From positions 207,291 through 271,290 of IMG/VR virus record IMGVR_UViG_3300034117_002447: 64,000 bases of DNA. One strand, given 5' to 3'. A program made the translations under genes and the position numbers. Within the stretch, counting starts at the first letter, position 1. The number at the start of each line of letters is the position of its first letter. Of the stretch, positions 1-55,607 are shown piece by piece. The notes under the pieces were generated by a model that saw only the letters and a program-made list of their open reading frames with translations, ran no database searches and was not told where the DNA came from.

Positions 1-2
1 GA

Positions 3-3000
3 TCCATTAGAACCTGAGGTTCCAGAAGAACCTGAAGTACCGGATGTACCATTTGAACCATCTACTCCGCTTATACCTGAAGTACCAGAAGTACCTCGTG
101 TTCCAGAAGAACCTGAGCTACCATTTGAACCACTTGTTCCAGAAGAACCGTTTGAACCTGAAGTTCCACTTGATCCGTTTGAACCTGAAGTTCCAGAAGA
201 ACCATTAGAGCCTGAAGTACCAGCAGAACCTGAAGTTCCAGATACTCCATCTATACCGGAAGTACCAGAAGAACCGGCTGTTCCGGAACTTCCATTTGAT
301 CCTGAAGTACCGCTTGAGCCGTTTGAACCAGAAGTACCTGACGTTCCTGAGCTGCCGTTTGAACCTGAAGTTCCAGCTGTTCCAGAAGAACCATTAGAAC
401 CGCTTGTCCCAGAAGTACCTGAGCTACCATTAGAACCAGATGTTCCACTTGAGCCGTTTGAACCAGAAGTACCGGCGGTTCCTGAGGTTCCAGACGTACC
501 TGAAGTTCCTGAGGTTCCGCTTGTACCAGTCGATCCTGACGTTCCGGATGTTCCGCTTGTACCAGCAGTGCCTGATGAACCTGATGTTCCAGAAGAACTT
601 GAAATTTGGCCAGTTGAGGTTAACACAAAAGAGTAATTTTGAGTTCCCTCAGTGTACCAAGTCACATCATGATTTCCACTAGACTGATCGACTACGTATA
701 TTTTAACAATCATTCTATCCGTTGGATTAATAGTTGTTGTTGGTAGCACTACATCAACGTTAGCTTCAACTGGAATCGTTGAACTAATCCAACCTATAAG
801 AACTTGATTAGTTGGTATTACTGTTCCATAACTAACACCTGCACTATTTGCTAATTCAATAGTAACAAATGTGTCTGTATTAAATCCTGCGCCGTCTTTT
901 AAGAAATGTAAATGGAATCTTTGTGTTCCTCCTGGTATTACAGAAAATCCTAATTCAGGAGTTATAAATTGTTGTACTAATACTGGAGTAGTACCTGTTG
1001 TAGTTTTAAGTATTGATTGTTGAGCAGCGCCGGTCGGATTAATATTTAGGTCTCTATACGTACCTATTCCAGAAGCAACTGACTGATTAAAATAATAAAT
1101 TTGACCTGCCGATATTCCAGTAGCTCCACTAGTTCCTGAAGAACCAGATGTTCCACTTGAACCGGAAGTTCCAGAAGTTCCGCTTGTTCCAGAAGTTCCT
1201 GACGAACCTGAAGTTCCAGAAGTTCCGCTTGTACCCGCCGTGCCGGATGAACCTGATGTTCCCGAAGTTCCACTTGAACCAGAAGTTCCAGTAGTTCCAG
1301 AAGAACCTGATGTTCCAGCCGTTCCGCTTGATCCATTTGAACCAGATGTTCCTGACGAACCAGAAGTACCTGAGCTACCGTCTGAACCTGAAGTTCCAGA
1401 AGAACCATTTGTTCCTGAGACTCCGTCTATTCCAGAAGTACCTGAAGAACCATCTGATCCTGACGTTCCAGAAGAACCATTTGAACCTGATGTACCAGAT
1501 GTTCCTGACGAACCATTAGAACCACTTGTTCCAGAAGTACCTGAGCTACCATTTGAACCGGAAGTCCCTGATGTTCCAGAAGAACCGTTAGAACCTGATG
1601 TTCCTGACGAACCAGAAGTACCTGAGCTACCGTCTGAACCCGATGTTCCAGAAGAACCGTTTGAACCTGAAGTACCAGATGAACCGTTAGAACCTGATGT
1701 TCCTGACGAACCAGAAGTACCTGAGCTACCGGCTGAACCTGACGTACCAGAAGAACCATTTGTTCCTGAGACTCCGTCTATTCCACTAGTACCTGAAGAA
1801 CCATCTGAGCCTGAAGTTCCAGAAGAACCATTTGAACCTGATGTACCAGAGGTACCATTTGAACCTGAAGTTCCAGAAGAACCATTTGAACCAGAAGTAC
1901 CTGATGTTCCAGAAGAACCGTTTGAACCTGAAGTACCAGTTGAACCAGAAGTACCGGATGTTCCTGAAGAACCGTCTGAACCTGAAGTTCCTGAAGAACC
2001 GTTTGAACCTGATGTTCCAGAGCTACCATTTGAACCTGAAGTACCTGAAGTACCTGAGCTACCATCTGAGCCGGAAGTTCCGCTTGAGCCGTTTGTTCCT
2101 GAGACTCCATCTATTCCAGAAGTTCCAGAAGAACCGTCTGAACCTGATGTACCGCTTGAGCCGTTAGAGCCTGAAGTACCAGATGTACCAGATGTTCCCG
2201 AAGAACCGTTAGAACCTGAAGTACCTGAAGTTCCAGAAGAACCTGAAGTACCAGAGCTACCGTTTGAGCCTGAAGTACCTGAGCTACCGTCTGAGCCACT
2301 AGTACCAGAAGAACCATTTGAACCAGATGTTCCTGAAGTACCAGAGCTACCATTTGAACCGGAGGTACCTGATGTTCCAGAAGAACCTGAAGTACCTGAG
2401 CTACCATCTGAACCTGATGTTCCCGAAGAACCATTTGTTCCAGAAACTCCGTCTATTCCAGAAGTTCCAGAAGAACCGTCTGAACCGCTAGTACCGCTTG
2501 AGCCGTTTGAACCCGAAGTTCCAGAAGAACCGTTTGAACCTGAAGTTCCGCTTGTGCCGGAAGTTCCAGCTGAACCACTTGTTCCACTTGATCCGCTAGT
2601 ACCCGAGCTACCATTTGAGCCACTAGTACCTGAGCTACCATTTGAACCTGAAGTACCCGAAGTACCAGATGAACCAGAAGTACCGCTTGAGCCGTTTGAA
2701 CCTGAAGTTCCTGAAGTACCTGAAGAACCGTTAGAACCAGAAGTACCTGAGCTACCGTCTGAACCTGACGTACCTGCTGAACCTGAAGTTCCTGATACAC
2801 CATCTATTCCAGAAGTACCTGAAGAACCATCTGAACCTGAAGTTCCAGAAGAACCGTTTGAACCTGATGTACCGGATGTTCCAGAAGAACCGTTTGATCC
2901 TGAAGTTCCAGAAGAACCATCTGAACCTGACGTACCAGATGAACCATTTGTTCCTGAGACTCCATCTATTCCTGATGTACCTGAGCTACCGTCTGATCCT

Positions 3001-4916
3001 GAAGTACCTGAGGTACCATTTGAACCTGAAGTACCTGAGGTACCATTTGAACCGTTTGAACCTGAAGTTCCGTTTGAACCCGAAGTTCCAGAAGAACCAT
3101 CTGAACCGGACGTACCGGCAGAACCTGAAGTTCCTGATACTCCGTCTATTCCAGAAGTACCTGAGCTACCGTCTGATCCTGAAGTACCTGAGCTACCGTT
3201 TGATCCTGAAGTTCCAGAGCTACCATTTGAACCTGAAGTACCTGAGGTACCATTTGAACCTGAAGTACCGCTTGAGCCATCTGACCCTGAAGTTCCAGCC
3301 GAACCTGATGTTCCTGAGACTCCGTCTATTCCTGATGTTCCGGAAGATCCATTTGAACCAGAAGTTCCAGAAGAACCGTTTGAACCGGAAGTTCCAGAAG
3401 AACCATTTGAACCGGAAGTACCTGAGCTACCGTCTGAACCTGACGTACCTGCTGAACCTGAAGTTCCGGAAACTCCGTCTATTCCTGATGTTCCCGAAGA
3501 ACCGTCTGACCCTGAAGTTCCAGAGCTACCATTTGAGCCTGATGTACCGCTTGAGCCGTTAGAACCTGAAGTTCCAGAAGAACCGTTTGAGCCTGATGTT
3601 CCAGAGCTACCGTCTGAACCGCTTGTTCCAGAAGAACCGCTTGTTCCTGAGACTCCATCTATTCCTGAAGTACCTGAACTACCGTCTGAACCAGAAGTAC
3701 CTGAAGTACCGGCTGACCCTGAAGTACCTGATGTTCCCGAAGAACCTGAAGTACCTGAGCTACCGTCTGAACCTGAAGTTCCAGCTGAACCTGAAGTTCC
3801 GGAAACTCCATCTATTCCTGAAGTACCTGAGCTACCGTCTGAACCAGAAGTACCTGAAGAACCTGATGTACCAGTTGAACCAGAAGTACCTGATGTACCT
3901 GATGTACCTGAGCTACCGTCTGAACCTGAAGTTCCAGAAGAACCGTTTGTTCCAGAGACTCCATCTATTCCTGAAGTACCTGAGCTACCGTCTGAACCAG
4001 AAGTACCTGAAGAACCTGATGTACCAGTTGAACCAGAAGTACCTGATGTACCTGAGCTGCCGTCTGAACCTGAAGTTCCAGAAGAACCGTTTGTTCCAGA
4101 GACTCCATCTATTCCTGAAGTACCAGAGCTGCCATCTGCACCAGAAGTCCCAGCTGAACCAGACGTTCCACTTGAACCGTTTGAGCCGGATGTACCAGAA
4201 GTACCGGTTGAACCGGACGTACCTGAAGTACCTGACGTACCAGATGAACCGGCAGTACCGGAAGTTCCACTTGTTCCTGAAGTACCGGATGAACTAGTAA
4301 GTCCATCTTCTAATGTTGTACCAATATAGTAAAAACCTTTAATATATGGATCAACTGATCCATAAGTAGAAGTTAAATAAGTAACCATTGAATCTGATAA
4401 TAGTAGAATACCATTATCGTAATTAAAAACCCAACTTACTTCAGTGCCTGCATTATCAGTAGTTAAGATTTGGGTTCCGCCTGATGCAGGATTACCATTC
4501 CAAAATTCAGCGGTCCATCCAATTGAAGGAGCACCGCTTGCTTGCAATATCTTTTGAGGTTGAATCCAGTCTAGGATTTGTGTGTTAAAATCGTTAAGCG
4601 TCGAACAGGCTACCCATGTAGTATTATTACCTGAAATAACTTGACTTAATTCTACGGCATTTCCTGTAGAATATGCGTCTGCTACAATCGTTTCCAACGG
4701 TTGACCTGATGCTAATAGAGCAACAGCCGCTGATTTATTTGCAACTGGGTTTTGTTTAACAACATCGAACTGAGTTAAAACTCGAGCAGCTGATATATTA
4801 GGGTTAAACGCAAACTTTGCTTCGTACCAATTAAAATTAGAGGCAGAATCAATTACGTTTGCGGCTTGGACCTTAAATACGAGTTTTAATCTTTCATTAT
4901 CTGTATAGCCTGCCAT
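3..4916 (-). CDS. Giant Gly-Ser-Thr collagen-like (Gly-X-Y) virion/fiber protein, 3'-truncated by the window edge (>=1638 aa)
   Basis: Translated by hand from ATG at 4916 ([24 protein letters not shown]...). About 210 aa of N-terminal domain, then GTS/GSS/GSN/GID triplets from ~4286 to ~1113, a ~170-aa globular insert ([10 protein letters not shown]...DRMIVKIY...[12 protein letters not shown], ~1110-600), then more Gly-X-Y to the window edge with no stop. Absent from the ORF track because it has no stop in the window. Confidence 0.92.
1113..4286 (-). repeat. Uninterrupted 9-nt-register Gly-X-Y repeat tract (~350 triplets)
   Basis: A Gly codon every 9 nt, seen as Pro at every third residue in the antisense shadow ORF. 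The 13 GIDGV landmarks are all spaced by multiples of 9 nt. Confidence 0.9.
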
Positions 4917-4923
4917 TTACTAA

Positions 4924-5124
4924 TTATATTATTTCGTTTTCTATTGATTCTTCCTGGTTTGCCTCATATAATTGACCTTCGTATTCTGCAACCATAATAT
5001 TAAATTCATTTATTGTTGTTTTAAATACGTTAACCATATCATCAGAAACTCGTATACTAAGAGAAACACTCTGCTTATCTTTATCTATTTTAACCTTAAG
5101 CTTTTTATCGAAACTTTTTTCCAT
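4924..5124 (-). CDS. Small hypothetical protein (66 aa) in the late operon
   Basis: ATG ORF filling the gap between two structural genes on the same strand (7- and 15-nt gaps). Confidence 0.7.
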   Translation of the reverse strand: MEKSFDKKLKVKIDKDKQSVSLSIRVSDDMVNVFKTTINEFNIMVAEYEGQLYEANQEESIENEII

Positions 5125-5139
5125 ATTATTAATTTTTTT

Positions 5140-7023
5140 TTAGTTGAATGTTACAGTCACTGTATCGATTCTAATAGCTGAATTGTGGATTTTAAATTCT
5201 ACGTATATTCCGTTTGTTGCATTAAATCCTCCAAATGTTCCATTTATTGTATTTCCACTGGATGAACCTAATCGGATTTGACCATCAGTTGCACCATCAT
5301 CAAATGTTCCAAAATTATAACCTGAACCGTTTAGGATTAATGGATACGAAGTAGGTCCAAAAACTCCAACGGTTGCTCCTATTTTACGAACAGTTACAGT
5401 AAGAGCACCGCTAATTAAATCAGCTAGAGCAGATCCGCCTGCGAAAGTTCCAGCGAATACCATTGAAAAACTAGGAATTGGAACGCTTGACGAACTTAGT
5501 GTAGTATAAAATTTTCTATAGTACGATGCAGCTGCAGTAAGTGAAGAATAGTTTGGGTTTGAACCATTTAAGTCTGATTTAAAAGCAGCTAGATCGGGTT
5601 GAATTGTTGCAGTATTTGGTGCAGTTAAGAAATATTGATCAGGTCTAACGATTGTACCACCGACAACGCAAGCATTTCCGTTTGATAGACTTGCGGTAGA
5701 AACCCATGCAGTCGTGTAATCGCTTTGTAATCTAAAAGCCTCATCGTCAAATCGCTCTACGTATTGAGTGCTATTTCCACTAGTTGGATATGTGTCCACT
5801 AATATTGAATGAGTTGAAGAAGATTTAGTTCCGCCTGAAGACCATGGATCAAATAGTGAAGCAGTCGCGGCTGCAGTTGCTCCTCGATACCTAAAATTTG
5901 AAGAATTAATCGCCCAATTTAAAATATCATATTCAGCAGCTGTATTGTTGAAGAAATTGGTCCATCCAGTAAAAGTACCAGAAGTTGGTGACCATGCATA
6001 TTCAGCAATAGTTGGAACTCCGTACGATGGTGCAACAAATTGAAAATTAGTATTTGCGCCAAGAGCACGGCCTTGAGTATTTGCGTTTAGGTTATTAATT
6101 GCATCAACGTGTGCACTAAACTGTGAAGTTAGAGTGTAGTACTCAACACCGCTTAGATGCTTGGTTACAATATTTCCTAGAGTTTCTTCGATTGTACAAG
6201 TTGAACCGGCTCCAAAGCTTGGAGTAGATGCATTTGTATCAAAGAAAACTGCAGATTGTGTATAAGTGAAAGTTTGAGCACCATCACTAGTTGAATCAGT
6301 TAGGTTTGTAATAACTATATTGTATTTACCGCCGTCTATTAAACCTACGCCAGATAGTACTTGATCAATATCAACGGTTACGGTAATGTCAGCTTTTTGT
6401 TTTAAACTATCAGTTGCAAAACCGGCAATAATAATGTCAATACCGTCTGTACTTGAATATGTCCCGTCTGCAGTAACTCCCTGAGAAAATGTTGAAATAA
6501 TAGTGGTGCCATCTGCATCATATACATCAACGGTTACCGTAGCGTCTCCGCCTTGACCAGTTACCGCATTTGCTGTACTGAATGAGACTGTGCTACTAGT
6601 TGTCGTTGACTGATTTGTACCTGCCCAAGTTCCAGCCTTAAATGGAGTTCCTTCAGTCGTTGGATTGCTTATTCTAACCGTTGATCTAGCTAAAGTTTCT
6701 GATACTAATCCAGACGAGGTTCCGTCGTTTGTGCCAAAGTGACTTGCGAATGTTGGAGTAGGAACGTAAACATTTATTGTACTTGAATCTCCAGGTTTCT
6801 GAGCTCCAAGTATATCAATTCCAACAAAATTAACTTTTGAATAATTTCCGACAAGAACGCCTTCATCATAAAAATCAATTCCGCTAATTCCACTTGAGCC
6901 GGTATTTGGAGAATCATTCCAATATAAATTACCCGAATTATCTATTGCTAAAAATTTAGTCTTGGTGTTATCCTGGGATACTCCGCTAAGATCAACTTGT
7001 TTTATTTTAAGTTTGTGGGACAT
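5140..7023 (-). CDS. Virion structural / fiber-like protein (627 aa)
   Basis: Ser/Thr/Gly-rich, beta-strand-like composition. First gene behind the late promoter at 7055-7062. Confidence 0.7.
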   Translation of the reverse strand: MSHKLKIKQVDLSGVSQDNTKTKFLAIDNSGNLYWNDSPNTGSSGISGIDFYDEGVLVGNYSKVNFVGIDILGAQKPGDSSTINVYVPTPTFASHFGTNDGTSSGLVSETLARSTVRISNPTTEGTPFKAGTWAGTNQSTTTSSTVSFSTANAVTGQGGDATVTVDVYDADGTTIISTFSQGVTADGTYSSTDGIDIIIAGFATDSLKQKADITVTVDIDQVLSGVGLIDGGKYNIVITNLTDSTSDGAQTFTYTQSAVFFDTNASTPSFGAGSTCTIEETLGNIVTKHLSGVEYYTLTSQFSAHVDAINNLNANTQGRALGANTNFQFVAPSYGVPTIAEYAWSPTSGTFTGWTNFFNNTAAEYDILNWAINSSNFRYRGATAAATASLFDPWSSGGTKSSSTHSILVDTYPTSGNSTQYVERFDDEAFRLQSDYTTAWVSTASLSNGNACVVGGTIVRPDQYFLTAPNTATIQPDLAAFKSDLNGSNPNYSSLTAAASYYRKFYTTLSSSSVPIPSFSMVFAGTFAGGSALADLISGALTVTVRKIGATVGVFGPTSYPLILNGSGYNFGTFDDGATDGQIRLGSSSGNTINGTFGGFNATNGIYVEFKIHNSAIRIDTVTVTFN

Positions 7024-7054
7024 TCGGTTTTAATTTACATTTTTCTACTACAGT

Positions 7055-7062
7055 TATTTATC
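7055..7062 (-). promoter_or_regulatory. T4-like late promoter (GATAAATA)
   Basis: 31 nt upstream of the 627-aa structural gene; same box as the other structural units. Confidence 0.65.
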
Positions 7063-7084
7063 ATCACTAGTAGATCCAAGTAAT

Positions 7085-8041
7085 CTATTTCCGTTTCTCC
7101 TTGGCATATAAAATAGCAGCAACGTATTTCCCAGATGCGCTTTCCGGATCAACGTACGATAGATCAGTATCAAATGGACTACTTGATCGAAAATCTGCTT
7201 TATAAAATAACGTATCTTTGGTTGAATCAGTTACTCCAGCATTGTGCATAATTGGGCACTTATTGTATGCATGGATATCAGAAGTTCCCCAACTAAAATC
7301 AAGTTCAGGAGTAACAATCGTCTGGGCTCCCATTTTCCATGCTCCCCAAAGAACTGACCACATATCAGCACACCACTTTTGAATTGGATTAAATTGAGCC
7401 GCTTCTTCTGTAGATAAATTAGAGCGGTCTTGATGCTCTCTATCACACATGTACTTGTAAATAGTCAATGTGTCCTCGGCTACTTCTTTCCAGAAATCGG
7501 CAGTTACACCTTTCATTAAGTATTGAGCACCGCCTGAGCCAGCCTCATTTGCTTCCACTAATTCCGGTGGAATTCCTGAAAGACTGCATAGATCTGTGAA
7601 AATATCTTCTGATTTGCTCTTAATGTACTTCGCACCAATGTATGAAATTGTGTCGCTTACGTACCAATAAAGATCTCCATGTAGGGCATCAAAGTTAGGA
7701 AGTTCTCTAAAAATAATATCAGAATCATGGTAAAAGACAGTTTCTCCACGAAGTTCCGGATGAGCTCTAAAGTGCTGTTCTAGAATATCAGGTCTTAGGA
7801 TCGGAATGTATCCATAATTTTCAGTTATTCTCTTTTTATAGAAAAAGAATCTTACCATTGGATATTTGGAAGCAAGAGCTCTACCTTCAGGCGAAGGTTC
7901 ATTATCATAGGCAAATAGAATATCTATCCAGTTAGGGTTTATTCCGCTCTTCATAAAATTATGAATTACTACCTCAACTTGCCAATGAAAATACGGGTGG
8001 TCCGGCTGAGCGGACATAAATATAGTCTTCTTAGTTAGCAT
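7085..8041 (-). CDS. GT-A fold glycosyltransferase, resembling peptide O-glycosyltransferases (GT96 SERGT1 / GT95 HPAT-like)
   Basis: DxD motif after a hydrophobic strand (VFYHDSDIIF), with YFHWQ, YIPILRP, GSGGAQY, KWCADMWSVLWG and IMHN in the same order as the motifs I recall for plant SERGT1/HPAT (YFDWQ, Y..INKP/LNRP, DAD, W..EMY, HY). Confidence 0.7.
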   Translation of the reverse strand: MLTKKTIFMSAQPDHPYFHWQVEVVIHNFMKSGINPNWIDILFAYDNEPSPEGRALASKYPMVRFFFYKKRITENYGYIPILRPDILEQHFRAHPELRGETVFYHDSDIIFRELPNFDALHGDLYWYVSDTISYIGAKYIKSKSEDIFTDLCSLSGIPPELVEANEAGSGGAQYLMKGVTADFWKEVAEDTLTIYKYMCDREHQDRSNLSTEEAAQFNPIQKWCADMWSVLWGAWKMGAQTIVTPELDFSWGTSDIHAYNKCPIMHNAGVTDSTKDTLFYKADFRSSSPFDTDLSYVDPESASGKYVAAILYAKEKRK

Positions 8042-8071
8042 ACTAATTTATACTACTAATTGGCTTAAGGT

Positions 8072-10498
8072 TTATCCTCTAATGGTAGTAGTTGTAGTTA
8101 GATATTCAGTTACGTTAACTTCATACAGACACTCATCTAATATGATTTTCCACTTACCAATTGGGTCGATTGTAAATATACCTTCGATTATAGTATCAGA
8201 TCCGTCGATTGTTACAGTATACATACCTTCTGAAATAGGCGCGTTTATATTATCAAATATTTGAATTACTGAATACTCAGTTGTTGATAAAACAAACGAT
8301 ATAGTCTTAGCCTCACGGTCTTGATAATACTCAATTGATACAGATGGGCATCCAATTGTAGTAGTAGTGGTAGTTGATGGAGCAAGCGTAGTGGTTGTGG
8401 TCGTTGCCGCTAGCGTTGTAGTCGTAGTAGTAATTCCGCTATACAGTCCGCAATCTATCACAGTTAAAGTTTGAGCACCTGCATCAAATTCATAACAGAA
8501 TGTACATGTCGAGTTAATTGTTACTTTGAGAGGTCCATCGATTAGCGCTAAATTTTCAGCCGGAATTCTAGTTGTACCTGTGTAAATAATATCGGCAAAT
8601 TGCTGGATCGTATAAAGTAATCCTCCAGGCCCAGTAACTTGAAAAGTATATTGACTTTCGCCAGTCTGGGATGGAGTAACTGTGAATTCGCTACATGGAT
8701 CAATCGTCGTCGTTGTAGTAGTCGGAGCAATCGTCGTTGTAGTAGTCGGAGCGATTGTTGTAGTGGTAGTCGGCTCAATTGTCGTAGTAGTAGTCGGCTC
8801 AATTGTCGTAGTAGTAGTCGGAGCGATTGTTGTAGTGGTAGTCGGTGCAATCGTCGTAGTAGTCGGCGCAATTGTCGTCGTAGTGGTTGGAGCAGCGGTG
8901 GTAGTTGTTGTGGTAACTGCACCAAACTCAACGTTAACTACGTATTGGCAGCCTGCCGCATTGGTAAACGTGTACGTACCATATACGGTATTAATATTTG
9001 AAGATAAGTACTCAGAATCAGTTCTGTTAAATATCCATGAAAGACTTATGTTAACTCCATGCAATTCAGTCAGATTGTAGGTAGGTCCACCTGCTGACGC
9101 AAAGACTACTGAATACGGACCAGTTGGAGTTCCTATAAATGATATGACTGTTGCATTTAAGTTTTCAGCAACTGAGTAATTAATTGAGCCTGGAGCACAA
9201 GTCGTTGTTGTACTTGTTGGTGCGATCGTAGTAGTCAAGGTAGGCGAAACCGTTGTAGTTGTTGTAGTTGGAGTAGCCTGAAAAGGAATAGCGTAAAAAG
9301 GACTAAATGAGGTTACTTGCGCCCATATTTTTCTAGTTGCATAGTCAGGAGCATACGGTCCAGTTAAGACAGTTTCATCAACATAGACTCCATTTACATT
9401 ATGGAATATTCGAACTGTGTCAAATACCGGCTCAGTCATTGCTTGAGGTAGAGTAAATTCAAGAAGAGCTCCAATAGTTAATGGAGTTGAAATATCAAAT
9501 GCCATTGCTGCATTATTTAAGTAATAACCTGCCGGTAAAATACCAGATGGAGATAGAGTCGGCGCTGGTACAGAACATACTGTGATTGGCGCAGATTCTG
9601 TAGCGTTTGTATCTAACACAACCGATACTCCAACCTGTGGGTGATTCGTTGAACTTTGACCAGCTTGCACAATTTCGGTCGTACATAAAACGCCAGCTGC
9701 TCCGCAATAAGGATCAGCTGATGTGTAAATTAGAGTTACAAAATCGCCACCGTCTAGTCCATATCCAGCAACAGAAGTGTTCCAATAAAGTTCATCAGTT
9801 GAATCAACTGCCCCGTAATTACTTGCAGTAGTCCCATTGTCTTTACTAAAGTACGCTGGCGCTACTTTGGTGCCATCTCCTATGATTATTTGTTGGCCGT
9901 TAATGAACAATAAGTACTCACTAGTCGTGATCGGCGCGGGCATCGGAAGTAATCCTGGTGAAACTAAAGCAGAGTCTCCAGTAATTACATTTGGCGTTAC
10001 CGATCTGGTTACAGCCGCTCTACAAGAACCTGCACCGCCTCCGCTGAGTAGCGTCCAGCCAGTTGATACTAAATATCCATAAAATCCTTCAATTCGGCCG
10101 CCCTGTTGAGTAATGTAGATTACTTCTCCTGGAACTCCAGTTGGCGGAATTGCTCCGTATACTTTAAGTCGAAGCCTTTTACCTTCAACTACATCTTCCA
10201 TTACCGCATTTTTACCGGTGATTGCGCCAGTTGGGTAGAGTTTTATTACTTCAGGATACGACCCATTTTGTTGCTGTGCACCGTATACAGTTAGACCTTG
10301 CCTAACGATGATTGTGTTTGCTGAAATTCCTTCAATGTCAACTGAAACTCCACCAGTTTGATCGAAGTTAACGGCTGATAGAAACTCAGTTATTGCTGAC
10401 TTTATTGTGCTAAAATTAAAATTAGCCAAATCAACAACGCTAGTTAAGCTAGCACCGTTAATTGATTTTACACTTGAAATTTTTAATTGAATTGACAT
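8072..10498 (-). CDS. Mucin-like Thr-rich multidomain virion protein (808 aa)
   Basis: Globular segments separated by Thr-run linkers, including (T4-6)I[AED]P x8. The N-terminal LANFNF segment is shared with other fiber genes. Lies behind the late promoter at 10527. Confidence 0.75.
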   Translation of the reverse strand: MSIQLKISSVKSINGASLTSVVDLANFNFSTIKSAITEFLSAVNFDQTGGVSVDIEGISANTIIVRQGLTVYGAQQQNGSYPEVIKLYPTGAITGKNAVMEDVVEGKRLRLKVYGAIPPTGVPGEVIYITQQGGRIEGFYGYLVSTGWTLLSGGGAGSCRAAVTRSVTPNVITGDSALVSPGLLPMPAPITTSEYLLFINGQQIIIGDGTKVAPAYFSKDNGTTASNYGAVDSTDELYWNTSVAGYGLDGGDFVTLIYTSADPYCGAAGVLCTTEIVQAGQSSTNHPQVGVSVVLDTNATESAPITVCSVPAPTLSPSGILPAGYYLNNAAMAFDISTPLTIGALLEFTLPQAMTEPVFDTVRIFHNVNGVYVDETVLTGPYAPDYATRKIWAQVTSFSPFYAIPFQATPTTTTTTVSPTLTTTIAPTSTTTTCAPGSINYSVAENLNATVISFIGTPTGPYSVVFASAGGPTYNLTELHGVNISLSWIFNRTDSEYLSSNINTVYGTYTFTNAAGCQYVVNVEFGAVTTTTTTAAPTTTTTIAPTTTTIAPTTTTTIAPTTTTTIEPTTTTTIEPTTTTTIAPTTTTTIAPTTTTTTIDPCSEFTVTPSQTGESQYTFQVTGPGGLLYTIQQFADIIYTGTTRIPAENLALIDGPLKVTINSTCTFCYEFDAGAQTLTVIDCGLYSGITTTTTTLAATTTTTTLAPSTTTTTTIGCPSVSIEYYQDREAKTISFVLSTTEYSVIQIFDNINAPISEGMYTVTIDGSDTIIEGIFTIDPIGKWKIILDECLYEVNVTEYLTTTTTIRG
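8695..8925 (-). repeat. Mucin-like TTTTTI[A/E/D]P tandem repeat (8 units plus a TTTTTTAAP lead)
   Basis: Read directly from the translation. Further Thr tracts at ~9200-9275, ~8370-8430 and the C-terminus. Confidence 0.9.
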
Positions 10499-10526
10499 CG
10501 TTATTTAAAGTATCTAACTTTTTAGT

Positions 10527-10534
10527 TATTTATT
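10527..10534 (-). promoter_or_regulatory. T4-like late promoter (AATAAATA)
   Basis: Upstream of the mucin-like gene and glycosyltransferase unit. Confidence 0.65.
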
Positions 10535-10552
10535 AACTTGAAAGAAGAATCG

Positions 10553-11905
10553 TTATTTTATTGGATTTTTACTGCCTTTTGCTGTACCTGAAAGAACTTC
10601 TGTTTTACTATCAACTTCTGCATCTAGTGCAATAATACCTGATCTAACGATACACTCATTTAGATTAGCATAGATGACACTTTCTGGAGAACTTTTGATA
10701 TAACTAAGGTCTATTCGATTAACGCTACCTTTTTCAAACATACACTCGTCTAGGTGACAGTATCGGATATCGTTTCCGGTTAGGATTCGACATTCGGTTA
10801 TATGTGATGATCTTACTTTGCAGCCATAAAGCATACAGTCTGTAATCTCTGCCTCAATTGAGCAATTTATCAAGTCAAGCCCTTTAATTCCAAATCCTTC
10901 CTTTAACGAAGAATCTTTTAATTGAACTCTCTCCGTATCAGTATCATAGTTAATAGAACCTTTAGTCATTTGGCCAAAAGTAATTAAGTCAAATAGGCTA
11001 TCTCTAACCTTTAGGTAATTTGCTTCAAGAATACGAGGGTCATCTTTTAAGTCAACGTAAAGATCGATATTTGGAAAATTCTTAGTGAAATTTTCGTATG
11101 ACTTTAGAGCAAGAGTGTTATCTCTTTGTTTTTTCAAAACATCGTGAACTTTTTTCTGTTCATCAATTGAGTATTGGTAATTAGATTGAAGCGTGTTGTA
11201 CAGAGACTCGGCTATGTAGTTAACTAAGTTAGTTGCACTAGATCTCTTATTTTGATAGTCGGCTCCACCTGCGTATCTAACTTCAACGTAACCGTCTTTT
11301 AACTTATCGAAATTAATTCCAAAGTATTTAGATTGAGGGTAATTAAATTCAAGTGGACTGCTGGGTTTTGAATAGGCGATTGACGTCTCAGCTAGGAACT
11401 TATTTTTAGGGTAAATATTTGTTACTGGATTCTTGTAAATCTTTTGAATTCTAGATTTAGCAGAAGGCCACATGTCAAAGATTTTCTCCTCATTTAGTCC
11501 AAGAATGTACTTAAAAACATTTAGATTCTGAAGACGCTCTCTTAAACCAAGATCAAATTCATTTAGTGACATATTAATATGCAGTCCAGTACGTTCGGTC
11601 GTGAATCCATTTTCATCGATAAAATTCATAACTTTATACATAACGTGAATTGCTTCATTATATGGCATTACTCCAGTAATAAGCTCATTCATTTTAAATC
11701 CGCCTGAAAAATCTGGCTCTAATTTGAATTCTGAGTAACTTACGGCAATATCTGAATTGTATTCGTTTGTGCTGATTACTTTTTTGCCAAGTAATACTTC
11801 CAATTTTTCAGCAAGCTCAGCCCTACCGATTGGAGAAAAGAATTCAAATTCGAATCCAATATTTACGTTGTCAAAAAGACGTTGTTGATTTAGATCTTTA
11901 TACAT
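10553..11905 (-). CDS. Putative amidoligase (Amidoligase_2 / COOH-NH2 ligase type) with a C-terminal beta-solenoid-like region
   Basis: GFEFEF, ELITG, TGLHIN, KYFGINF and VEVRYAGG match the glutamine-synthetase-like amidoligase 2 pattern. The C-terminal ~110 aa have Cys/Ile-rich short repeats. Confidence 0.75.
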   Translation of the reverse strand: MYKDLNQQRLFDNVNIGFEFEFFSPIGRAELAEKLEVLLGKKVISTNEYNSDIAVSYSEFKLEPDFSGGFKMNELITGVMPYNEAIHVMYKVMNFIDENGFTTERTGLHINMSLNEFDLGLRERLQNLNVFKYILGLNEEKIFDMWPSAKSRIQKIYKNPVTNIYPKNKFLAETSIAYSKPSSPLEFNYPQSKYFGINFDKLKDGYVEVRYAGGADYQNKRSSATNLVNYIAESLYNTLQSNYQYSIDEQKKVHDVLKKQRDNTLALKSYENFTKNFPNIDLYVDLKDDPRILEANYLKVRDSLFDLITFGQMTKGSINYDTDTERVQLKDSSLKEGFGIKGLDLINCSIEAEITDCMLYGCKVRSSHITECRILTGNDIRYCHLDECMFEKGSVNRIDLSYIKSSPESVIYANLNECIVRSGIIALDAEVDSKTEVLSGTAKGSKNPIK

Positions 11906-11910
11906 AATTG

Positions 11911-13983
11911 TTATTTGTTTATTGCAATGAATGGTACATTTAGTCGAGGTCGAGCATTATCAATTATAGCTAGAGTAGATTCGTCTCTAACGAATAGCTG
12001 ACTCACTATAAATTCGTGATCCTCTGACTGAACCATTGTATTAAATAGTCTAACATTTGCAATTGAATAATTAGCAGAAGGTAGAGCCCAATTTTGAGTA
12101 GTTACAAAGCTAAATGTTCCAGGTTTAGCTGAGCCGTTAAATACTAAGTCAAGTCGATTGTAGTTTTTAATATTCGCTGGGTCCTGATTAAATTCATATA
12201 CGTTAACTTCAAGCTGGCCGTATTGAGCGGATACTGGAACGATTATTGAATACCATTCATCGTATAACAATTCGCCAACAGTAAATGAGTATTGACTGCT
12301 ATTAATTCTTACGTGAATCGTTACGCTAGGTAATCCAGAAACGTCAGTTATTCCACAGGAGATGACTAAGCCTTTACTATTGATGTTATCATATCCATCA
12401 AATATTCGGATGGTCTGTGATCCTGCATTGAATTTAACTAGCGCGCTAAATGTCATATTTGGAGTAACTTCAGTTGAGGCAACTGCTTTATAGACAACTG
12501 CATGCTCGGATTGCTTGAATTGAAATTTGCCAACAAAACTTTGGGTTAAATCTTGAAATCTAGAGGTTAGGCTCAGGTCTCGATAACCTTCAACTACCAC
12601 ATATTTGCCTAAGTGATCAAGGAAAGAATCTTTGGGCCCATTCATTTTAACTGAGACTAATTTACCAGTAGAATCTAGGTAACTGTCTCCAGTATTTAAT
12701 TGGTTATTCAGCCATGCACTGTAAATTGAACTGCTTTCGTATGCCCAAATTTCGTAAGGTTTTGCAGTAGTTTTTAGGTACTGATCTTCCTTTGTGTTTG
12801 AGGTAGTAGTTATGTAATTTTGCAAGACTGGTTTAACTGCACTCATATCGTAATAGTACTCGATTAATGGAGCATAGTTAAAAGTTTTATCCAAAATTTT
12901 ATTATCAAGATCTGGGTGTAGTGATCTACGAGTCTCATCGAATTTGTGCGAAATCGTTTTAAACTGTTGTTTATCCAGAGCATCATTTGTCTGAACTTCA
13001 GCTTGTACACCGAATAGTTCATCGCTTGTCATAATAATATTGTCAAGGAATATTCGATCAGGCTCTTTCATTAGCATATCGATATTTGGATGAAATTTAG
13101 TTAATTGAATTTTCCAGTAAAGAGGCTCCATCATGAATCCTCTAAACAGATAAGATCCTTGAATTTCGTACATTCGATTGGTTAATGGAAAGTACATGTA
13201 ATCTCTTTTACGAGGTTGTGTGTTTGGTCCAAAAATAGACTGAAAGTAGATATTATCGATATGAATCTCAAATGGTATTTCAAAATCTACACCAAACTCA
13301 GTAAAGTTAGGTTTATTATCTGGGAATACATTATTTGGAACTACTACTTTAACACATTTTCGATCCAGTGTTTTAAATAGAGTCCACTCTTTAAATATAA
13401 AATCTCCGCCATCTCTATCCGGCTCAGTTTTAAAGTAAACTACTTCATGGCCAAACAATTTATTTGTTTGTAGGCTCAATTCCTTAGAGATTCCGATCGC
13501 ACTTCCAACTTCATAAGGTTTAAATGAAGCTTCTCTCTCAGCGATTAGAGCTGGACAGCGTTCAGCTGAACAGTAAACGGTCGGTGTGTATAGAGTTACA
13601 TCAATGTGAGTGCTTTGAACTCTAAATTTAATATTGTTAACGATTAATGGAGAGGTAAGCGCATCGTAATTAATTCCGTTATCGTATTCGTACTTGACCT
13701 CAAAGAAGACGTCGCTATTTGCAAAGTCTAGCACGTTAATTTCAGAAAGATCGTCTGGGCTAAAGGAATACCAAAGTGACCAGTTTCCACGGTTTAACGA
13801 ATATCTAAATTTACGATTAATATTAGTAGAGACCGCTGTTCCAAGCTCAAGCGATTCATCGAATCCCACGATTTTCACAGCCCCAGGTAAAGGTTCGCCA
13901 GTAGAAAATATTCTATAATTTTTACTGTACGCAACCGAGTTCTTATCAGGTTCCGGAATTATCTTGTAGGTGACTACTTGCAT
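11911..13983 (-). CDS. Neck / head-closure protein (T4 gp14-like) with extra N- and C-terminal (LamG-like) domains
   Basis: FGHEVVYF...FEIHI...PRKRDYMYFPLTNRMYEI resembles the gp14 GDLIYFPMDNSLFEI motif. The C-terminal beta-sandwich-like part ends IANVRLFN. Confidence 0.6.
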   Translation of the reverse strand: MQVVTYKIIPEPDKNSVAYSKNYRIFSTGEPLPGAVKIVGFDESLELGTAVSTNINRKFRYSLNRGNWSLWYSFSPDDLSEINVLDFANSDVFFEVKYEYDNGINYDALTSPLIVNNIKFRVQSTHIDVTLYTPTVYCSAERCPALIAEREASFKPYEVGSAIGISKELSLQTNKLFGHEVVYFKTEPDRDGGDFIFKEWTLFKTLDRKCVKVVVPNNVFPDNKPNFTEFGVDFEIPFEIHIDNIYFQSIFGPNTQPRKRDYMYFPLTNRMYEIQGSYLFRGFMMEPLYWKIQLTKFHPNIDMLMKEPDRIFLDNIIMTSDELFGVQAEVQTNDALDKQQFKTISHKFDETRRSLHPDLDNKILDKTFNYAPLIEYYYDMSAVKPVLQNYITTTSNTKEDQYLKTTAKPYEIWAYESSSIYSAWLNNQLNTGDSYLDSTGKLVSVKMNGPKDSFLDHLGKYVVVEGYRDLSLTSRFQDLTQSFVGKFQFKQSEHAVVYKAVASTEVTPNMTFSALVKFNAGSQTIRIFDGYDNINSKGLVISCGITDVSGLPSVTIHVRINSSQYSFTVGELLYDEWYSIIVPVSAQYGQLEVNVYEFNQDPANIKNYNRLDLVFNGSAKPGTFSFVTTQNWALPSANYSIANVRLFNTMVQSEDHEFIVSQLFVRDESTLAIIDNARPRLNVPFIAINK

Positions 13984-14000
13984 TAATTTTGTCTTTTTGT

Positions 14001-14008
14001 TATTTATC
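14001..14008 (-). promoter_or_regulatory. T4-like late promoter (GATAAATA)
   Basis: Upstream of the neck and amidoligase unit. Confidence 0.65.
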
Positions 14009-36369: not shown

Positions 36370-37953
<1,584 letters not shown>

Positions 37954-47310: not shown

Positions 47311-47317
47311 ATAAATA
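47310..47317 (+). promoter_or_regulatory. T4-like late promoter (TATAAATA)
   Basis: Directly after the nrdA terminator and before the putative internal head proteins. Confidence 0.7.
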
Positions 47318-47337
47318 ACAGTAACAAATAGACTATT

Positions 47338-55512: not shown

Positions 55513-55535
55513 CGAGTTTGCGTATTATTTTAAGT

Positions 55536-55607
55536 TATTTATTTATCGCATTAGTCCCAAATTCATAACTTTTGAACTTGGTCTAGTTGTTGCTACTGTT
55601 ATTTATC
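55536..55607 (-). promoter_or_regulatory. Tandem late promoters for the tail sheath (GATAAATA at 55540-55547 and 55600-55607)
   Basis: Two GATAAATA boxes (the first overlapping AATAAATA) upstream of the sheath ATG. Confidence 0.65.

What the first reader, a model, noticed from the sequence alone, without database searches (positions are those of the whole stretch)
3..10498. Candidate phage virion O-glycosylation system: a plant SERGT1/HPAT-like glycosyltransferase between a mucin-like and a Ser/Thr collagen-like virion protein
Seen in the sequence: a GT-A enzyme (7085-8041, DSD motif) lies 30 nt downstream of a protein with eight TTTTTI[AED]P repeats, under one late-promoter box (10527). The next late unit ends in a protein whose repeat tracts are dominated by Gly, Ser and Thr. 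Established: GT96 (SERGT1) and GT95 (HPAT) glycosylate Ser/Hyp in repetitive plant and algal wall proteins. Virion glycosylation by phage GTs has been shown in some mycobacteriophages, though to my knowledge not with this enzyme type. Inference: this jumbo phage coats its particle or fibers with O-glycans on mucin- and collagen-like scaffolds, for shielding, adhesion or triple-helix stability.
Basis: partly seen in the sequence, partly recalled or inferred. Interest (0 to 1): 0.88.

Follow-up and report, generated by a model that had tools for sequence, protein, structure and literature searches.

The report
Phage sugar-tagging enzyme for threonine-rich proteins
A giant phage carries an unnamed sugar-transferring enzyme next to a protein with mucin-like threonine stretches, and across hundreds of unrelated phages this enzyme appears and disappears together with such stretches, so sugar-coated phage particles may be much more common than the few cases known.

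Summary
On the minus strand, a late-promoter-like box (10525-10533) precedes an 808-aa protein with eight T(4-6)-I-[AED]-P repeats. The 318-aa gene 7085-8041 starts 30 nt after it. A second box (7053-7061) starts a unit that ends in a proline-free Gly-Ser/Thr collagen-like giant.

The 318-aa protein is a confident GT-A glycosyltransferase fold (pLDDT 94). Its D-S-D motif and a downstream His are invariant. No Pfam, NCBIfam or PDB sequence match exists; PHROG 4417 is 'unknown function'.

Comparative evidence supports protein O-glycosylation:
- In 47 non-redundant loci (31-100% enzyme identity), a poly-Thr protein lies directly upstream in 30, and within two genes in 38. Elsewhere the rate is 26 of 524.
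- These upstream proteins form at least 13 groups with no BLAST similarity to each other.
- In Bacillota siphophages the enzyme follows the capsid or tail-tube gene, and those proteins end in matching poly-Thr tags.
- Among 70 homologous tail-tube proteins, 12 carry the tag and all 12 have the enzyme. The other 58 have neither.
- Enzyme and tag switch together at all 8 changes on the tail-tube tree.

The plant SERGT1/HPAT kinship is untested and unsupported. The collagen-like protein is not shown to be a target. No sugar transfer has been measured. I rate this a new variant of phage virion glycosylation.

The parts
10525..10533 (-). Late-promoter-like box ATAAATAAC, 27 nt upstream of the 808-aa gene. 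It probably starts the two-gene unit of the 808-aa protein and the glycosyltransferase.
   Evidence: Eight copies in the window against 1.78 expected; 0 of 100 shuffles reach 8; five copies lie 16-30 nt upstream of start codons. Sequence read. A sigma-70 region 2 protein is encoded elsewhere in the window. Promoter function is inferred.
8072..10498 (-). 808-aa modular protein, the proposed glycosylation substrate. It has a conserved N-terminal domain of about 405 aa, then three all-beta modules of about 90 aa bracketed by Cys and separated by poly-Thr linkers, and a short C-terminal Thr run.
   Evidence: ORF. Fifteen runs of four or more Thr. The family alignment shows a conserved N-domain and linkers of very variable length. 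In the AlphaFold model the linkers have pLDDT below 50 and two modules reach 80-89. No Pfam or PHROG match. No hydrophobic segment.
8702..8920 (-). Main mucin-like linker (residues 527-599), including the eight T(4-6)-I-[AED]-P units.
   Evidence: Regex count. Tandem repeat of period 24 and 7.9 copies at 8709-8894.
9200..9274 (-). First poly-Thr linker (residues 409-433).
8351..8440 (-). Third poly-Thr linker (residues 687-716).
7085..8041 (-). 318-aa soluble GT-A glycosyltransferase of an unnamed family (PHROG 4417). Proposed peptidyl-Thr/Ser O-glycosyltransferase.
   Evidence: AlphaFold pLDDT 94.4, pTM 0.91. Foldseek matches GT-A retaining enzymes at E 2.5e-7 to 1e-5. PHROG 4417 at E 3e-65, function unknown. 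1015 representatives at 50% identity. No hydrophobic segment (maximum 19-residue hydropathy 0.62).
7718..7726 (-). D106-S107-D108, the DxD metal and nucleotide-sugar motif of the enzyme.
   Evidence: D106 and D108 are invariant in alignments A1, A2 and A6.
7244..7246 (-). His266 of the conserved H-N-x-G motif, the likely third metal ligand as in GT8 and GT6 enzymes.
   Evidence: H266, N267 and G269 are invariant and A268 nearly invariant in 13 sequences down to 30% identity. The role is inferred by analogy with GT8 enzymes (established knowledge).
7053..7061 (-). Second late-promoter-like box, 30 nt upstream of the 627-aa gene. It starts the next unit.
5140..7023 (-). 627-aa protein (PHROG 31482, function unknown), probably fibre-like. 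In related phages the protein at this position carries 24-43 Gly-X-Y triplets behind a similar N-terminus.
4924..5124 (-). 66-aa ORF between the 627-aa gene and the collagen-like gene. Function unknown.
3..4916 (-). First 1638 residues of a collagen-like giant protein of more than 2609 aa. It has an N-terminal globular domain (PHROG 33494), Gly-X-Y tract 1 (nt 1110-4286), an internal globular domain, and Gly-X-Y tract 2 (nt 3-590). It is a possible second substrate, but this is not supported by co-occurrence.
   Evidence: Composition and 353 perfect triplets. Present downstream of the enzyme only in relatives with at least 63% enzyme identity. The plus-strand ORF 1240-4329 is a shadow of the repeat.
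10553..11905 (-). 450-aa Amidoligase_2 protein with a pentapeptide-repeat-like tail. It is conserved just upstream of the 808-aa gene in this clade and may be another protein-modifying enzyme. Its membership in the system is uncertain.
   Evidence: Pfam PF12224 at E 5e-7. Conserved position.

Best explanation
Gene 7085-8041 encodes a soluble, metal-dependent GT-A glycosyltransferase of a large family that has no name in any library searched. It is made late in infection from the same transcript as the 808-aa protein upstream. In the cytoplasm it probably takes a host nucleotide-sugar and attaches sugar to the hydroxyl groups of the threonine runs in that protein's linkers. The linkers would then become stiff, hydrophilic, protease-resistant mucin-like stalks that hold the small beta-sandwich modules away from the particle.

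The same enzyme family does this on a broad scale. In Bacillota siphophages its likely targets are short poly-Thr tags at the C-termini of the major capsid protein, a small 105-aa protein encoded just after the capsid gene, and the tail-tube protein.

Shown here: the fold and the conserved catalytic motif; the gene order; the co-occurrence and joint gain and loss of enzyme and poly-Thr tracts.

Inferred: that threonine is the acceptor, which sugar is used, that the 808-aa protein is on the virion, and what the glycan is for. No second glycosyltransferase is in the window. The glycan here may therefore be a single sugar or a short homopolymer, though about three quarters of the genome was not examined.
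For: Fold: AlphaFold pLDDT 94.4, pTM 0.91. Foldseek top hits are all GT-A enzymes, including WbbM, the UGGT catalytic domain, XXYLT1, Skp1 galactosyltransferase, glycogenin and alpha-1,3-GalT. D106, D108 and H266 are invariant down to 30% identity.

Linkage: in 47 non-redundant loci a poly-Thr protein is at position -1 in 30, and at -1 or -2 in 38, against 26 of 524 elsewhere (Fisher p = 9e-23) and 0 of 47 at +1. These upstream proteins form at least 13 groups with no BLAST similarity. Across clades no other neighbour of the enzyme is homologous. The 808-aa protein is the only one of 41 window ORFs with Thr runs. All 22 assessable homologs of its N-domain have the enzyme downstream.

Structural-module context: the enzyme follows the tail-tube or capsid gene in phiCTP1, iLp84, phiFL1A, bIL285, phage 1706 and many prophages. 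Capsid and tail-tube proteins of one phage end in matching tags: 47 loci have two or more tagged proteins, and in 32 of them at least two share the last two residues.

Contrast test: of 70 non-identical tail-tube homologs, 12 carry the tag and all 12 have the enzyme; 58 have neither (Fisher p = 9e-14). On the tail-tube tree the two traits change together at all 8 changes; at least 3 changes are forced by well-supported branches.

Family behaviour: members are fused to further GT domains, to a methyltransferase or to a radical-SAM/SPASM domain. Bacteroidota chromosomal members sit beside a LanB-type dehydratase, which acts on Ser/Thr of peptides, and a candidate precursor peptide.

Precedent: O-glycosylated C-terminal tails of capsid and tail-tube subunits in mycobacteriophages (Freeman et al. 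2023, PMID 37329881; cited in PMC12894461 and PMC12582341, not read here).
Against: No biochemical data exist for any family member. The held literature has nothing on it.

The fold does not reveal the acceptor. The single best structural hit is an O-antigen polymerase, and TM-scores are only 0.4-0.5.

Virion location of the 808-aa protein is not shown; its model is poor (pLDDT 58.6) and its fold search was uninformative.

Within the window's own clade there is no relative without the enzyme. The contrast evidence therefore comes from distant siphophages with 30-35% identical enzymes, where the tracts are C-terminal tags rather than internal linkers.

Nine of the 47 loci lack a flagged tract at -1 or -2. 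Most of these are near-threshold cases, but L041 and L043 show none nearby.

The Fisher tests ignore shared ancestry. Only three of the joint changes on the tree rest on strongly supported branches, and the sign test on those three pairs is not significant (p = 0.25).
Confidence: 0.65

Rival explanations
1. The enzyme glycosylates something other than protein, such as a host envelope polymer (teichoic acid, O-antigen, capsule), phage DNA or a small molecule. Its position beside Thr-rich proteins would then reflect conserved module order or an indirect link.
For: The best Foldseek hit is the O-antigen galactan polymerase WbbM. Phage and prophage GT-A enzymes that alter host surface polymers are well known (established knowledge). 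Some family members are fused to GT2- or GT25-like domains typical of polysaccharide synthesis.
Against: The gene sits inside late structural operons of lytic huge phages and between capsid, tail-tube and tape-measure genes. The protein has no membrane segment. The window encodes no flippase, sugar-nucleotide or DNA-hypermodification genes. Module order cannot explain the joint gain and loss of enzyme and poly-Thr tags among close relatives. It also cannot explain unrelated Thr-rich proteins upstream in different clades.
Confidence: 0.12
2. Both scaffolds are substrates. The enzyme also glycosylates Ser/Thr in the X and Y positions of the proline-free collagen-like giant, and the sugars stabilise its triple helix. 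Known parallels are galactosylated Thr in vent-worm cuticle collagen and glycosylated Gly-Pro-Thr repeats of the Bacillus exosporium protein BclA.
For: The collagen-like protein is 55% Ser+Thr in its repeats and has no Pro. Such a helix would plausibly need another stabiliser (inference from established collagen chemistry). It lies two genes downstream, in the next late unit. Collagen-like genes follow the enzyme in all close relatives.
Against: Collagen-like genes accompany the enzyme only in the clade with at least 63% enzyme identity. The 58-61% clade, the 42-46% clade and the Bacillota phages have the enzyme without them. The repeats have no Thr runs; Thr sits singly in the X position and Ser dominates. 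The family-wide signal is specifically poly-Thr.
Confidence: 0.25
3. The protein is a true member of the plant and algal GT95/GT96 (HPAT/SERGT1) lineage, acquired or shared by horizontal transfer.
For: Only a functional analogy: those enzymes glycosylate Ser or hydroxyproline in repetitive wall proteins (established knowledge), and this family is linked to repetitive Thr tracts.
Against: No sequence signal appeared in Pfam for 8 diverse members. NCBIfam gave none for the window enzyme, and PDB sequence and profile searches gave none. The family is spread through Bacillota and Bacteroidota phages and Bacteroidota chromosomes. It has no membrane anchor, whereas HPAT and SERGT1 are Golgi membrane proteins (established knowledge). 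No GT95/GT96 reference could be obtained, so this remains untested rather than refuted.
Confidence: 0.05
4. The protein has lost transferase activity and serves as an assembly chaperone or structural component that merely binds Thr-rich tails.
For: No activity data exist. It lies where tail-assembly chaperone genes lie in siphophages. The C-terminal 60-110 residues of some Bacillota versions resemble the small protein that follows the tail-tube gene in phages without the enzyme.
Against: The DxD motif, the His motif and about 25 other positions are invariant across 30-100% identity. This is the pattern of a working active site. Fusions to other GT and methyltransferase domains argue for a glycan-building role.
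Confidence: 0.05

Closest known systems
Mycobacteriophage virion glycosylation (Che8, Corndog, Myrna; Freeman et al. 2023, PMID 37329881)
   Same: Phage-encoded glycosyltransferases are paired with Ser/Thr-rich C-terminal tails on capsid and tail-tube subunits. The Bacillota relatives found here show exactly that layout. Methyltransferase partners also occur in this family as fusions.
   Different: No mycobacteriophage is among the 77 phage records with a homolog, so this is a different enzyme family. The hosts are Bacillota and Bacteroidota. In the window's phage the tracts are internal mucin-like linkers of a large modular protein, not C-terminal tags. Nothing is experimentally shown here. 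The details of the 2023 paper are from my own knowledge; the paper was not held.
GT8 / GT24 / GT6 retaining GT-A glycosyltransferases (glycogenin, UGGT catalytic domain, XXYLT1, LgtC-type, alpha-1,3-GalT)
   Same: GT-A fold, DxD motif and a downstream His in an H-x-x-G-like motif. Several of these act on proteins or protein-bound glycans.
   Different: No sequence match to the Pfam models of these families. TM-scores are only 0.4-0.5 and identity 7-14%. The retaining mechanism is only suggested by fold neighbours.
Plant and algal SERGT1 (GT96) and HPAT (GT95)
   Same: Proposed activity on hydroxyl groups in repetitive, extended structural proteins.
   Different: No demonstrated homology. The phage enzyme is soluble, whereas the plant enzymes are Golgi membrane proteins. 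The acceptor tracts here are poly-Thr rather than Ser-Hyp motifs.
Mucin-type O-glycosylation and O-glycosylated Thr/Pro-rich linkers of microbial glycoside hydrolases
   Same: Thr runs punctuated by Pro, Ala or Ile, predicted disordered, separating folded modules. One relative's tract even matches the Pfam Mucin model weakly.
   Different: Those systems work in the secretory pathway or periplasm. Here everything lacks signal peptides and must act in the cytoplasm.
Glycosylated collagen-like proteins (Bacillus BclA Gly-Pro-Thr repeats; mimivirus collagen-like proteins; vent-worm cuticle collagen)
   Same: Gly-X-Y repeats rich in Thr or Ser encoded next to a glycosyltransferase.
   Different: Co-occurrence with this enzyme family is restricted to one clade. 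No evidence shows that the collagen-like protein is a substrate.
RiPP glycosyltransferases in lanthipeptide and glycocin clusters
   Same: Chromosomal Bacteroidota members of this family lie beside a LanB-type dehydratase, LanC-like genes and a candidate Gly-Gly-leader precursor peptide. This points to peptide Ser/Thr (or Cys) as acceptors.
   Different: Known glycocin enzymes such as SunS are GT2 family. The clusters seen here are uncharacterised.

Membership tests
GT-A fold glycosyltransferase superfamily | Single Rossmann-like alpha/beta/alpha nucleotide-sugar-binding domain | tested here: met
   AlphaFold model with pLDDT 94.4. 164 PDB matches at E <= 0.001; all 50 listed are GT-A enzymes. 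Annotated viral matches are mostly GT8-like.
GT-A fold glycosyltransferase superfamily | DxD motif for the divalent metal and the nucleotide-sugar diphosphate | tested here: met
   D106 and D108 are invariant in alignments of 27, 8 and 13 sequences.
GT-A fold glycosyltransferase superfamily | Measured sugar transfer from a nucleotide-sugar | not testable with these tools
   Needs an enzyme assay.
CAZy GT8 (Pfam Glyco_transf_8) | Significant match to the family's sequence model | tested here: not met
   No Pfam hit at E <= 0.1 for the window protein, and none among 8 diverse members at E <= 10. No hit in a PDB profile search.
CAZy GT8 (Pfam Glyco_transf_8) | Close structural superposition on GT8 enzymes | tested here: inconclusive
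   Glycogenin, XXYLT1 and related enzymes match at TM 0.40-0.51 and E about 1e-5. The fold class is shared, but this is not enough for family membership.
CAZy GT95 (HPAT) / GT96 (SERGT1) | Sequence homology to HPAT or SERGT1 catalytic domains | not testable with these tools
   No reference sequence, model or structure of these families could be obtained. Generic libraries gave no hit.
CAZy GT95 (HPAT) / GT96 (SERGT1) | Membrane-anchored Golgi enzyme | tested here: not met
   The maximum 19-residue hydropathy is 0.62, so there is no membrane segment.
Phage virion protein O-glycosylation system (mycobacteriophage type) | Phage-encoded glycosyltransferase together with Ser/Thr-rich tails on major virion subunits | tested here: met
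   Met for Bacillota relatives: capsid, tail-tube and the 105-aa protein carry poly-Thr C-terminal tags next to the enzyme. The association is 12 of 12 against 0 of 58. For the window's phage it is met only in a modified form: internal poly-Thr linkers in the adjacent 808-aa protein.
Phage virion protein O-glycosylation system (mycobacteriophage type) | Homology of the enzyme to the mycobacteriophage glycosyltransferases | tested here: not met
   tblastn against 50,697 phage records finds 77 records, none from Mycobacterium phages.
Phage virion protein O-glycosylation system (mycobacteriophage type) | Glycans detected on virion proteins | not testable with these tools
   Needs glycostaining or mass spectrometry of particles.
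Phage DNA glycosyltransferases | Fold or sequence match to known DNA glucosyltransferases, plus base-hydroxymethylation genes nearby | tested here: not met
   None appears among the top 50 PDB fold hits. Pfam finds no hydroxymethylase or other hypermodification gene in 30 further window proteins. The gene is in a late structural operon. Only 64 kb of a genome of about 271 kb was examined.
Collagen-like proteins (gene 3-4916) | Long uninterrupted Gly-X-Y repeats | tested here: met
   353 consecutive triplets with Gly at every first position, plus a second tract.

The most novel reading that the evidence does not exclude
This is one member of a large, unrecognised enzyme family: at least 1015 clusters at 50% identity, 427 IMG/VR contigs and 77 sequenced phages, including laboratory phages such as Enterococcus VPE25, phiFL1A and Lactococcus 1706. 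The family would run a cytoplasmic, mucin-type O-glycosylation system for phage particles. It would recognise a portable poly-threonine tag, either C-terminal on capsid and tail-tube proteins and a small head-module protein or internal in fibre linkers. Tag and enzyme are gained and lost together. Relatives have been recruited into lanthipeptide-like peptide pathways. If so, glycan-coated virions are common in phages of Bacillota and Bacteroidota, and the tag plus enzyme could serve as a simple genetically encoded glycosylation module.
Probability: 0.55. Interest if true: 0.85.

Novelty: new variant of a known kind. Interest (0 to 1): 0.8.

Why it matters
To my knowledge, protein glycosylation of tailed-phage particles has been shown experimentally only for a few mycobacteriophages, where it alters antibody recognition. 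If this enzyme family does what its genomic company indicates, three things follow.

- The phenomenon extends to phages of lactic acid bacteria, enterococci, staphylococci, clostridia and Bacteroidota, including huge phages. It would run on an enzyme family that every annotation library searched lists as unknown or leaves unnamed.
- It would explain the odd poly-threonine ends on many capsid and tail-tube proteins. It is relevant to how phages used in dairy control or therapy are seen by hosts, by bacterial defence sensors that detect capsid or tail proteins, and by immune systems.
- The prediction is easy to test in existing laboratory phages. A short poly-Thr tag with one soluble enzyme would also be an attractive tool for making defined glycoproteins in bacteria.

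Tried and rejected
- Near-identity DNA search of 4300-12000 against 50,697 phage records found no match.
- Pfam, NCBIfam and PDB sequence searches of the enzyme found nothing. The only PDB sequence 'hits' were TALE repeat proteins built from many sub-threshold fragments, which I rejected as spurious.
- The sigma-70 promoter and intrinsic-terminator scans were no better than shuffles.
- The AlphaFold model of the 808-aa protein was poor overall (pLDDT 58.6). Its Foldseek search gave only generic Ig-like strings (TM at most 0.14), so I do not use it to name the protein.
- Searching IMG/VR with the 808-aa N-domain for relatives lacking the enzyme gave no contrast; all 22 assessable loci have it.
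- My first tail-versus-enzyme table listed phages with the enzyme but no tag. These were false positives from short hits to a 74-136-aa protein lacking the catalytic motifs. They are corrected.
- A mixed tail-tube alignment was too diverse for the locus scan, so I narrowed it.
- The profile search of 1.84 billion representatives shows only the best 150. It could not reveal whether plant GT95/GT96 proteins lie in the weak tail of hits.
- Ten literature searches found no paper on this enzyme family or on poly-Thr tags of phage proteins. The key 2023 mycobacteriophage paper is not held.
- I considered and rejected the plus-strand ORF 1240-4329 (Pro/Glu/Val-rich) as a gene. It is the mirror frame of the Gly-X-Y repeat. 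The minus frame is longer, continues through two globular domains, and matches PHROG 33494.


Full report
**What is in the sequence**

All genes in 1-14000 that matter here lie on the minus strand. In order of transcription they are:

| Coordinates | Product |
|---|---|
| 11911-13983 | 690-aa protein with a weak neck-protein signal |
| 10553-11905 | 450-aa Amidoligase_2 protein |
| 8072-10498 | 808-aa protein |
| 7085-8041 | 318-aa protein |
| 5140-7023 | 627-aa protein |
| 4924-5124 | 66-aa ORF |
| 3-4916 | Frame open for 1638 codons, leaving the window |

- The 808-aa protein has eight T(4-6)-I-[AED]-P units at residues 538-600 and fifteen runs of four or more Thr in all. The DNA repeat has period 24 and 7.9 copies.
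- The 318-aa gene starts 30 nt after the 808-aa stop codon.
- The motif ATAAATAAC occurs 8 times in the window against 1.78 expected; no shuffle of 100 reaches 8. Five copies sit 16-30 nt before start codons. Two of these are at 10525-10533 (before the 808-aa gene) and 7053-7061 (before the 627-aa gene). None lies between the 808-aa and 318-aa genes.
- The open frame 3-4916 encodes a globular head, 353 uninterrupted Gly-X-Y triplets, a second globular domain and more triplets. The repeats are 33% Gly, 39% Ser and 16% Thr, with no Pro.
- The same phage is represented in IMG/VR by contigs of about 271 kb. There this protein exceeds 2609 aa.

**What the 318-aa protein is**

- It matches nothing in Pfam or NCBIfam and no PDB sequence, even as a 13-sequence profile. 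It belongs to PHROG 4417, 'unknown function'.
- With 27 homologs, AlphaFold gives a confident model (pLDDT 94.4, pTM 0.91).
- Foldseek places it among GT-A glycosyltransferases. The best hits are WbbM, the catalytic domain of UDP-glucose:glycoprotein glucosyltransferase, XXYLT1, a Skp1 galactosyltransferase, glycogenin and alpha-1,3-galactosyltransferase. E-values run from 2.5e-7 to about 1e-5, but TM-scores are only 0.4-0.5.
- Annotated viral matches beyond its own family are mostly GT8-like enzymes of giant viruses.
- D106 and D108 of the D-S-D motif, and His266 in an H-N-x-G motif, are invariant down to 30% identity.
- It has no hydrophobic segment.

It is thus a soluble, probably metal-dependent GT-A enzyme of a family of its own. 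The fold neighbours are retaining enzymes, which hints at mechanism but not at the acceptor.

**How large the family is**

| Search | Result |
|---|---|
| Word-indexed search | 1588 clusters at 90% identity |
| Profile search of 1.84 billion representatives | 1015 hits at E <= 0.001; 608 at E <= 1e-30 |
| IMG/VR | 427 contigs |
| GenBank phages | 77 of 50,697 records |

- The GenBank phages infect Lactobacillus, Enterococcus, Staphylococcus, Lactococcus, Clostridium, Arcanobacterium and Chryseobacterium. None infects Mycobacterium.
- Bacterial genomes hold it in prophages of many Bacillota and in Bacteroidota.
- Source names are 'hypothetical protein', 'prophage pi2 protein 34' or similar.

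**The key result: the enzyme travels with poly-threonine**

I called ORFs in every fetched locus. I flagged a protein when it had at least 16 Ser/Thr in some 24-residue window and at least two runs of four or more Thr.

- In 47 loci non-redundant at 90% enzyme identity (31-100% identity to the window's enzyme), a flagged protein is directly upstream in 30, and at -1 or -2 in 38. At all other positions the rate is 26 of 524 (Fisher p = 9e-23). Directly downstream it is 0 of 47.
- Most misses are near the threshold.
- The flagged proteins fall into at least 13 groups with no BLAST similarity once low-complexity sequence is masked.
- Outside the window's own clade, none of the window's neighbouring proteins has a detectable homolog near the enzyme, apart from a partial amidoligase match in one clade.

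What is conserved next to the enzyme is therefore a composition, not a protein family.

**Bacillota phages make the pattern explicit**

The enzyme gene directly follows the tail-tube gene or the major capsid gene.

- Examples after the tail-tube gene: phiCTP1 gp18, which is PHROG 6686 'tail tube protein'; phiFL1A gp50; phage 1706 orf13; and many Bacillaceae prophages.
- Examples after the major capsid gene: Lacticaseibacillus and Lactococcus prophages, including bIL285.
- In these phages the capsid protein, the tail-tube protein and often a 105-aa protein encoded just after the capsid gene end in runs of 5-10 Thr. Two or three further residues follow, and these are frequently identical within one phage. 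In phage 1706 both the capsid and the major structural protein end in a Thr run followed by His-His-Asp.
- Forty-seven enzyme-bearing loci have two or more such tagged proteins. In 32 of them at least two share the last two residues.
- In iLp84 a 125-aa protein made of one small domain plus a long poly-Thr tail sits between the capsid gene and the enzyme gene.

**A contrast test**

I searched IMG/VR with the tail-tube protein itself and kept 70 non-identical homologs with enough downstream sequence.

- Twelve end in a poly-Thr tag, and all twelve have the enzyme. Fifty-eight lack the tag, and none has the enzyme (Fisher p = 9e-14).
- An earlier version of this table was wrong. Short hits to a small protein without catalytic motifs had been counted as the enzyme.
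- On a tree of these proteins built without their tails, the tag needs 8 changes and the enzyme needs 8 changes, always on the same branches. Well-supported branches force at least 3 changes. The sign test on those three pairs alone is not significant (p = 0.25).
- Sister phages such as L154 (both traits) and L156 (neither) differ by under 0.1 substitutions per site.

**Other clues to a peptide or protein acceptor**

- About half of the best 150 family representatives are 500-600 aa or longer.
- Among ten long members scanned, the extra parts are further glycosyltransferase domains (GT7C-like, GT2, GT6, GT25-like, GT32-like), a methyltransferase, or a radical-SAM/SPASM domain. This is what one expects if the family starts a glycan that partners extend or decorate.
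- In Pedobacter, Chitinophaga and Niabella chromosomes, family members lie beside a LanB-type dehydratase (E 3e-94), weak LanC-like genes, peptidases and a 57-aa ORF. That ORF has a Gly-Gly leader-like motif and a core rich in Ser, Thr and Cys.

**Back to the window**

- The 808-aa family has a conserved N-terminal domain of about 405 aa. After it come variable numbers of Cys-bracketed modules of about 90 aa, joined by poly-Thr linkers whose length changes freely between relatives. The distance from the N-domain to the enzyme gene ranges from 443 to 2131 nt.
- AlphaFold predicts the linkers as disordered and the modules as beta-sandwiches. The whole model is too weak for a meaningful fold search.
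- It is the only protein of 41 in the window with Thr runs.
- Pfam finds no other glycosyltransferase, sugar-nucleotide enzyme or DNA-hypermodification gene in 30 further window proteins. It does find a tail sheath, a sigma-factor domain, PolB, gp32 and RNR. Together with the GroEL match, this marks a huge myovirus.
- A 254-kb contig with a 75% identical enzyme is binned with a Bacteroidetes genome, which hints at the host.

**Most likely mechanism**

- A late transcript from the 10525 box yields the 808-aa protein and the enzyme together.
- The enzyme uses a host nucleotide-sugar to glycosylate Thr in the linkers before or during assembly.
- The linkers become extended, hydrophilic, protease-resistant stalks.
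- I put this at 0.65. Fold, motif, gene order and co-evolution are shown. The acceptor atom, the sugar, virion location and purpose are inferred.

**Rivals**

The rivals are a non-protein acceptor (0.12), an inactive chaperone (0.05) and true GT95/GT96 membership (0.05). It is not supported by co-occurrence, because collagen-like genes follow the enzyme only in the clade with at least 63% enzyme identity.

**Comparison with what is known, and novelty**

- The closest known system is virion glycosylation in mycobacteriophages (Freeman et al. 2023, PMID 37329881; cited in PMC12894461 and PMC12582341; details from my own knowledge, since the paper was not held).
- The logic is the same: an enzyme plus Ser/Thr-rich tails on capsid and tail-tube subunits.
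- The enzyme family, the host phyla and, in this window, the substrate architecture are different.
- Ten literature searches found nothing on this family or on poly-Thr tags of phage proteins. The library does not cover subscription journals.
- I rate it a new variant of a known kind, with high interest, because the prediction is sharp and testable in phages already in laboratories.

Noticed in passing
L099:5287-9527 (Pedobacter caeni); also L090 and L091: Chromosomal Bacteroidota homologs of the enzyme (325-560 aa) lie in lanthipeptide-like clusters. Neighbours include a LanB-type dehydratase N-domain (E 3e-94), weak LanC-like genes, an M60 enhancin-like peptidase and an S41 peptidase. A 57-aa minus-strand ORF (L099:7525-7698) has a Gly-Gly leader-like motif and a Ser/Thr/Cys-rich core. 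This may be a glycosylated peptide natural-product pathway.
   Followed up: partly
L259 (Lactococcus phage 1706), L257 (Enterococcus phiFL1A), L258 (bIL285), L002 (Enterococcus VPE25): Published laboratory phages carry the enzyme and poly-Thr C-terminal tags on capsid and/or tail-tube proteins. In phage 1706 both orf10 and orf13 end in a Thr run followed by His-His-Asp. The records annotate the enzyme as hypothetical, or in one case (phiFL2B) as 'major tail protein'.
   Followed up: yes
window 10553-11905 (minus strand): A 450-aa Amidoligase_2 (PF12224) protein with a pentapeptide-repeat-like C-terminus sits just upstream of the 808-aa gene in all close relatives. A partial homolog lies 6-7 genes upstream of the enzyme in the 58-61% clade. 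It may be a second protein-modifying enzyme of the structural module.
   Followed up: partly
P0125, P0127, P0140, P0180, P0223 (family members): Many family members are fusions. The enzyme domain is joined to GT7C-like, GT2, GT6, GT25-like or GT32-like domains, to a methyltransferase, or to a radical-SAM/SPASM domain. About half of the top 150 representatives are 500-600 aa or longer.
   Followed up: partly
window 3-4916 and loci L005-L011: In contigs whose enzyme gene is 100% identical to the window's, the longest Gly-X-Y run of the collagen-like gene counts 388, 389 or 425 triplets. This is either real repeat-number variation or assembly error in the 9-nt repeat.
   Followed up: no
window 1240-4329 (plus strand): A 1029-aa Pro/Glu/Val-rich ORF is the mirror frame of the collagen-like repeat and is not a gene. 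Gene callers picking the longest ORF may take the wrong strand in truncated contigs; in L038 my own greedy caller did.
   Followed up: yes
window 7053-7061, 10525-10533, 13999-14007, 47311-47319, 55534-55542: ATAAATAAC lies 16-30 nt upstream of five start codons. It resembles the T4-type late promoter core TATAAATA (my own knowledge). The window also encodes a protein with a sigma-70 region 2 domain.
   Followed up: partly
L140-L219 (siphophage loci), protein after the tail-tube gene: The C-terminal 60-110 residues of the roughly 350-aa Bacillaceae versions of the enzyme resemble the 74-136-aa protein that follows the tail-tube gene in phages lacking the enzyme. This suggests the enzyme gene was inserted into, or fused with, that small gene, possibly a tail-assembly chaperone.
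   Followed up: no
window 36370-37953 and another ORF in 10000-64000: The phage encodes both a GroEL-type chaperonin (PHROG 5725, E 1e-158) and a Cpn10/GroES homolog (Pfam E 1.8e-19). It also encodes a DUF5122 beta-propeller protein.
   Followed up: no
window 8072-10498 and 5140-7023; relatives in L012-L038: By eye, the 808-aa and 627-aa proteins begin with similar short N-termini (Met-Ser, then an alternating Lys/Ile/Val strand). Pairwise BLAST finds no significant similarity there. In relatives the 627-aa counterpart carries collagen repeats or is fused into a 2899-aa collagen-like protein. This is consistent with a set of fibres sharing one attachment motif.
   Followed up: partly
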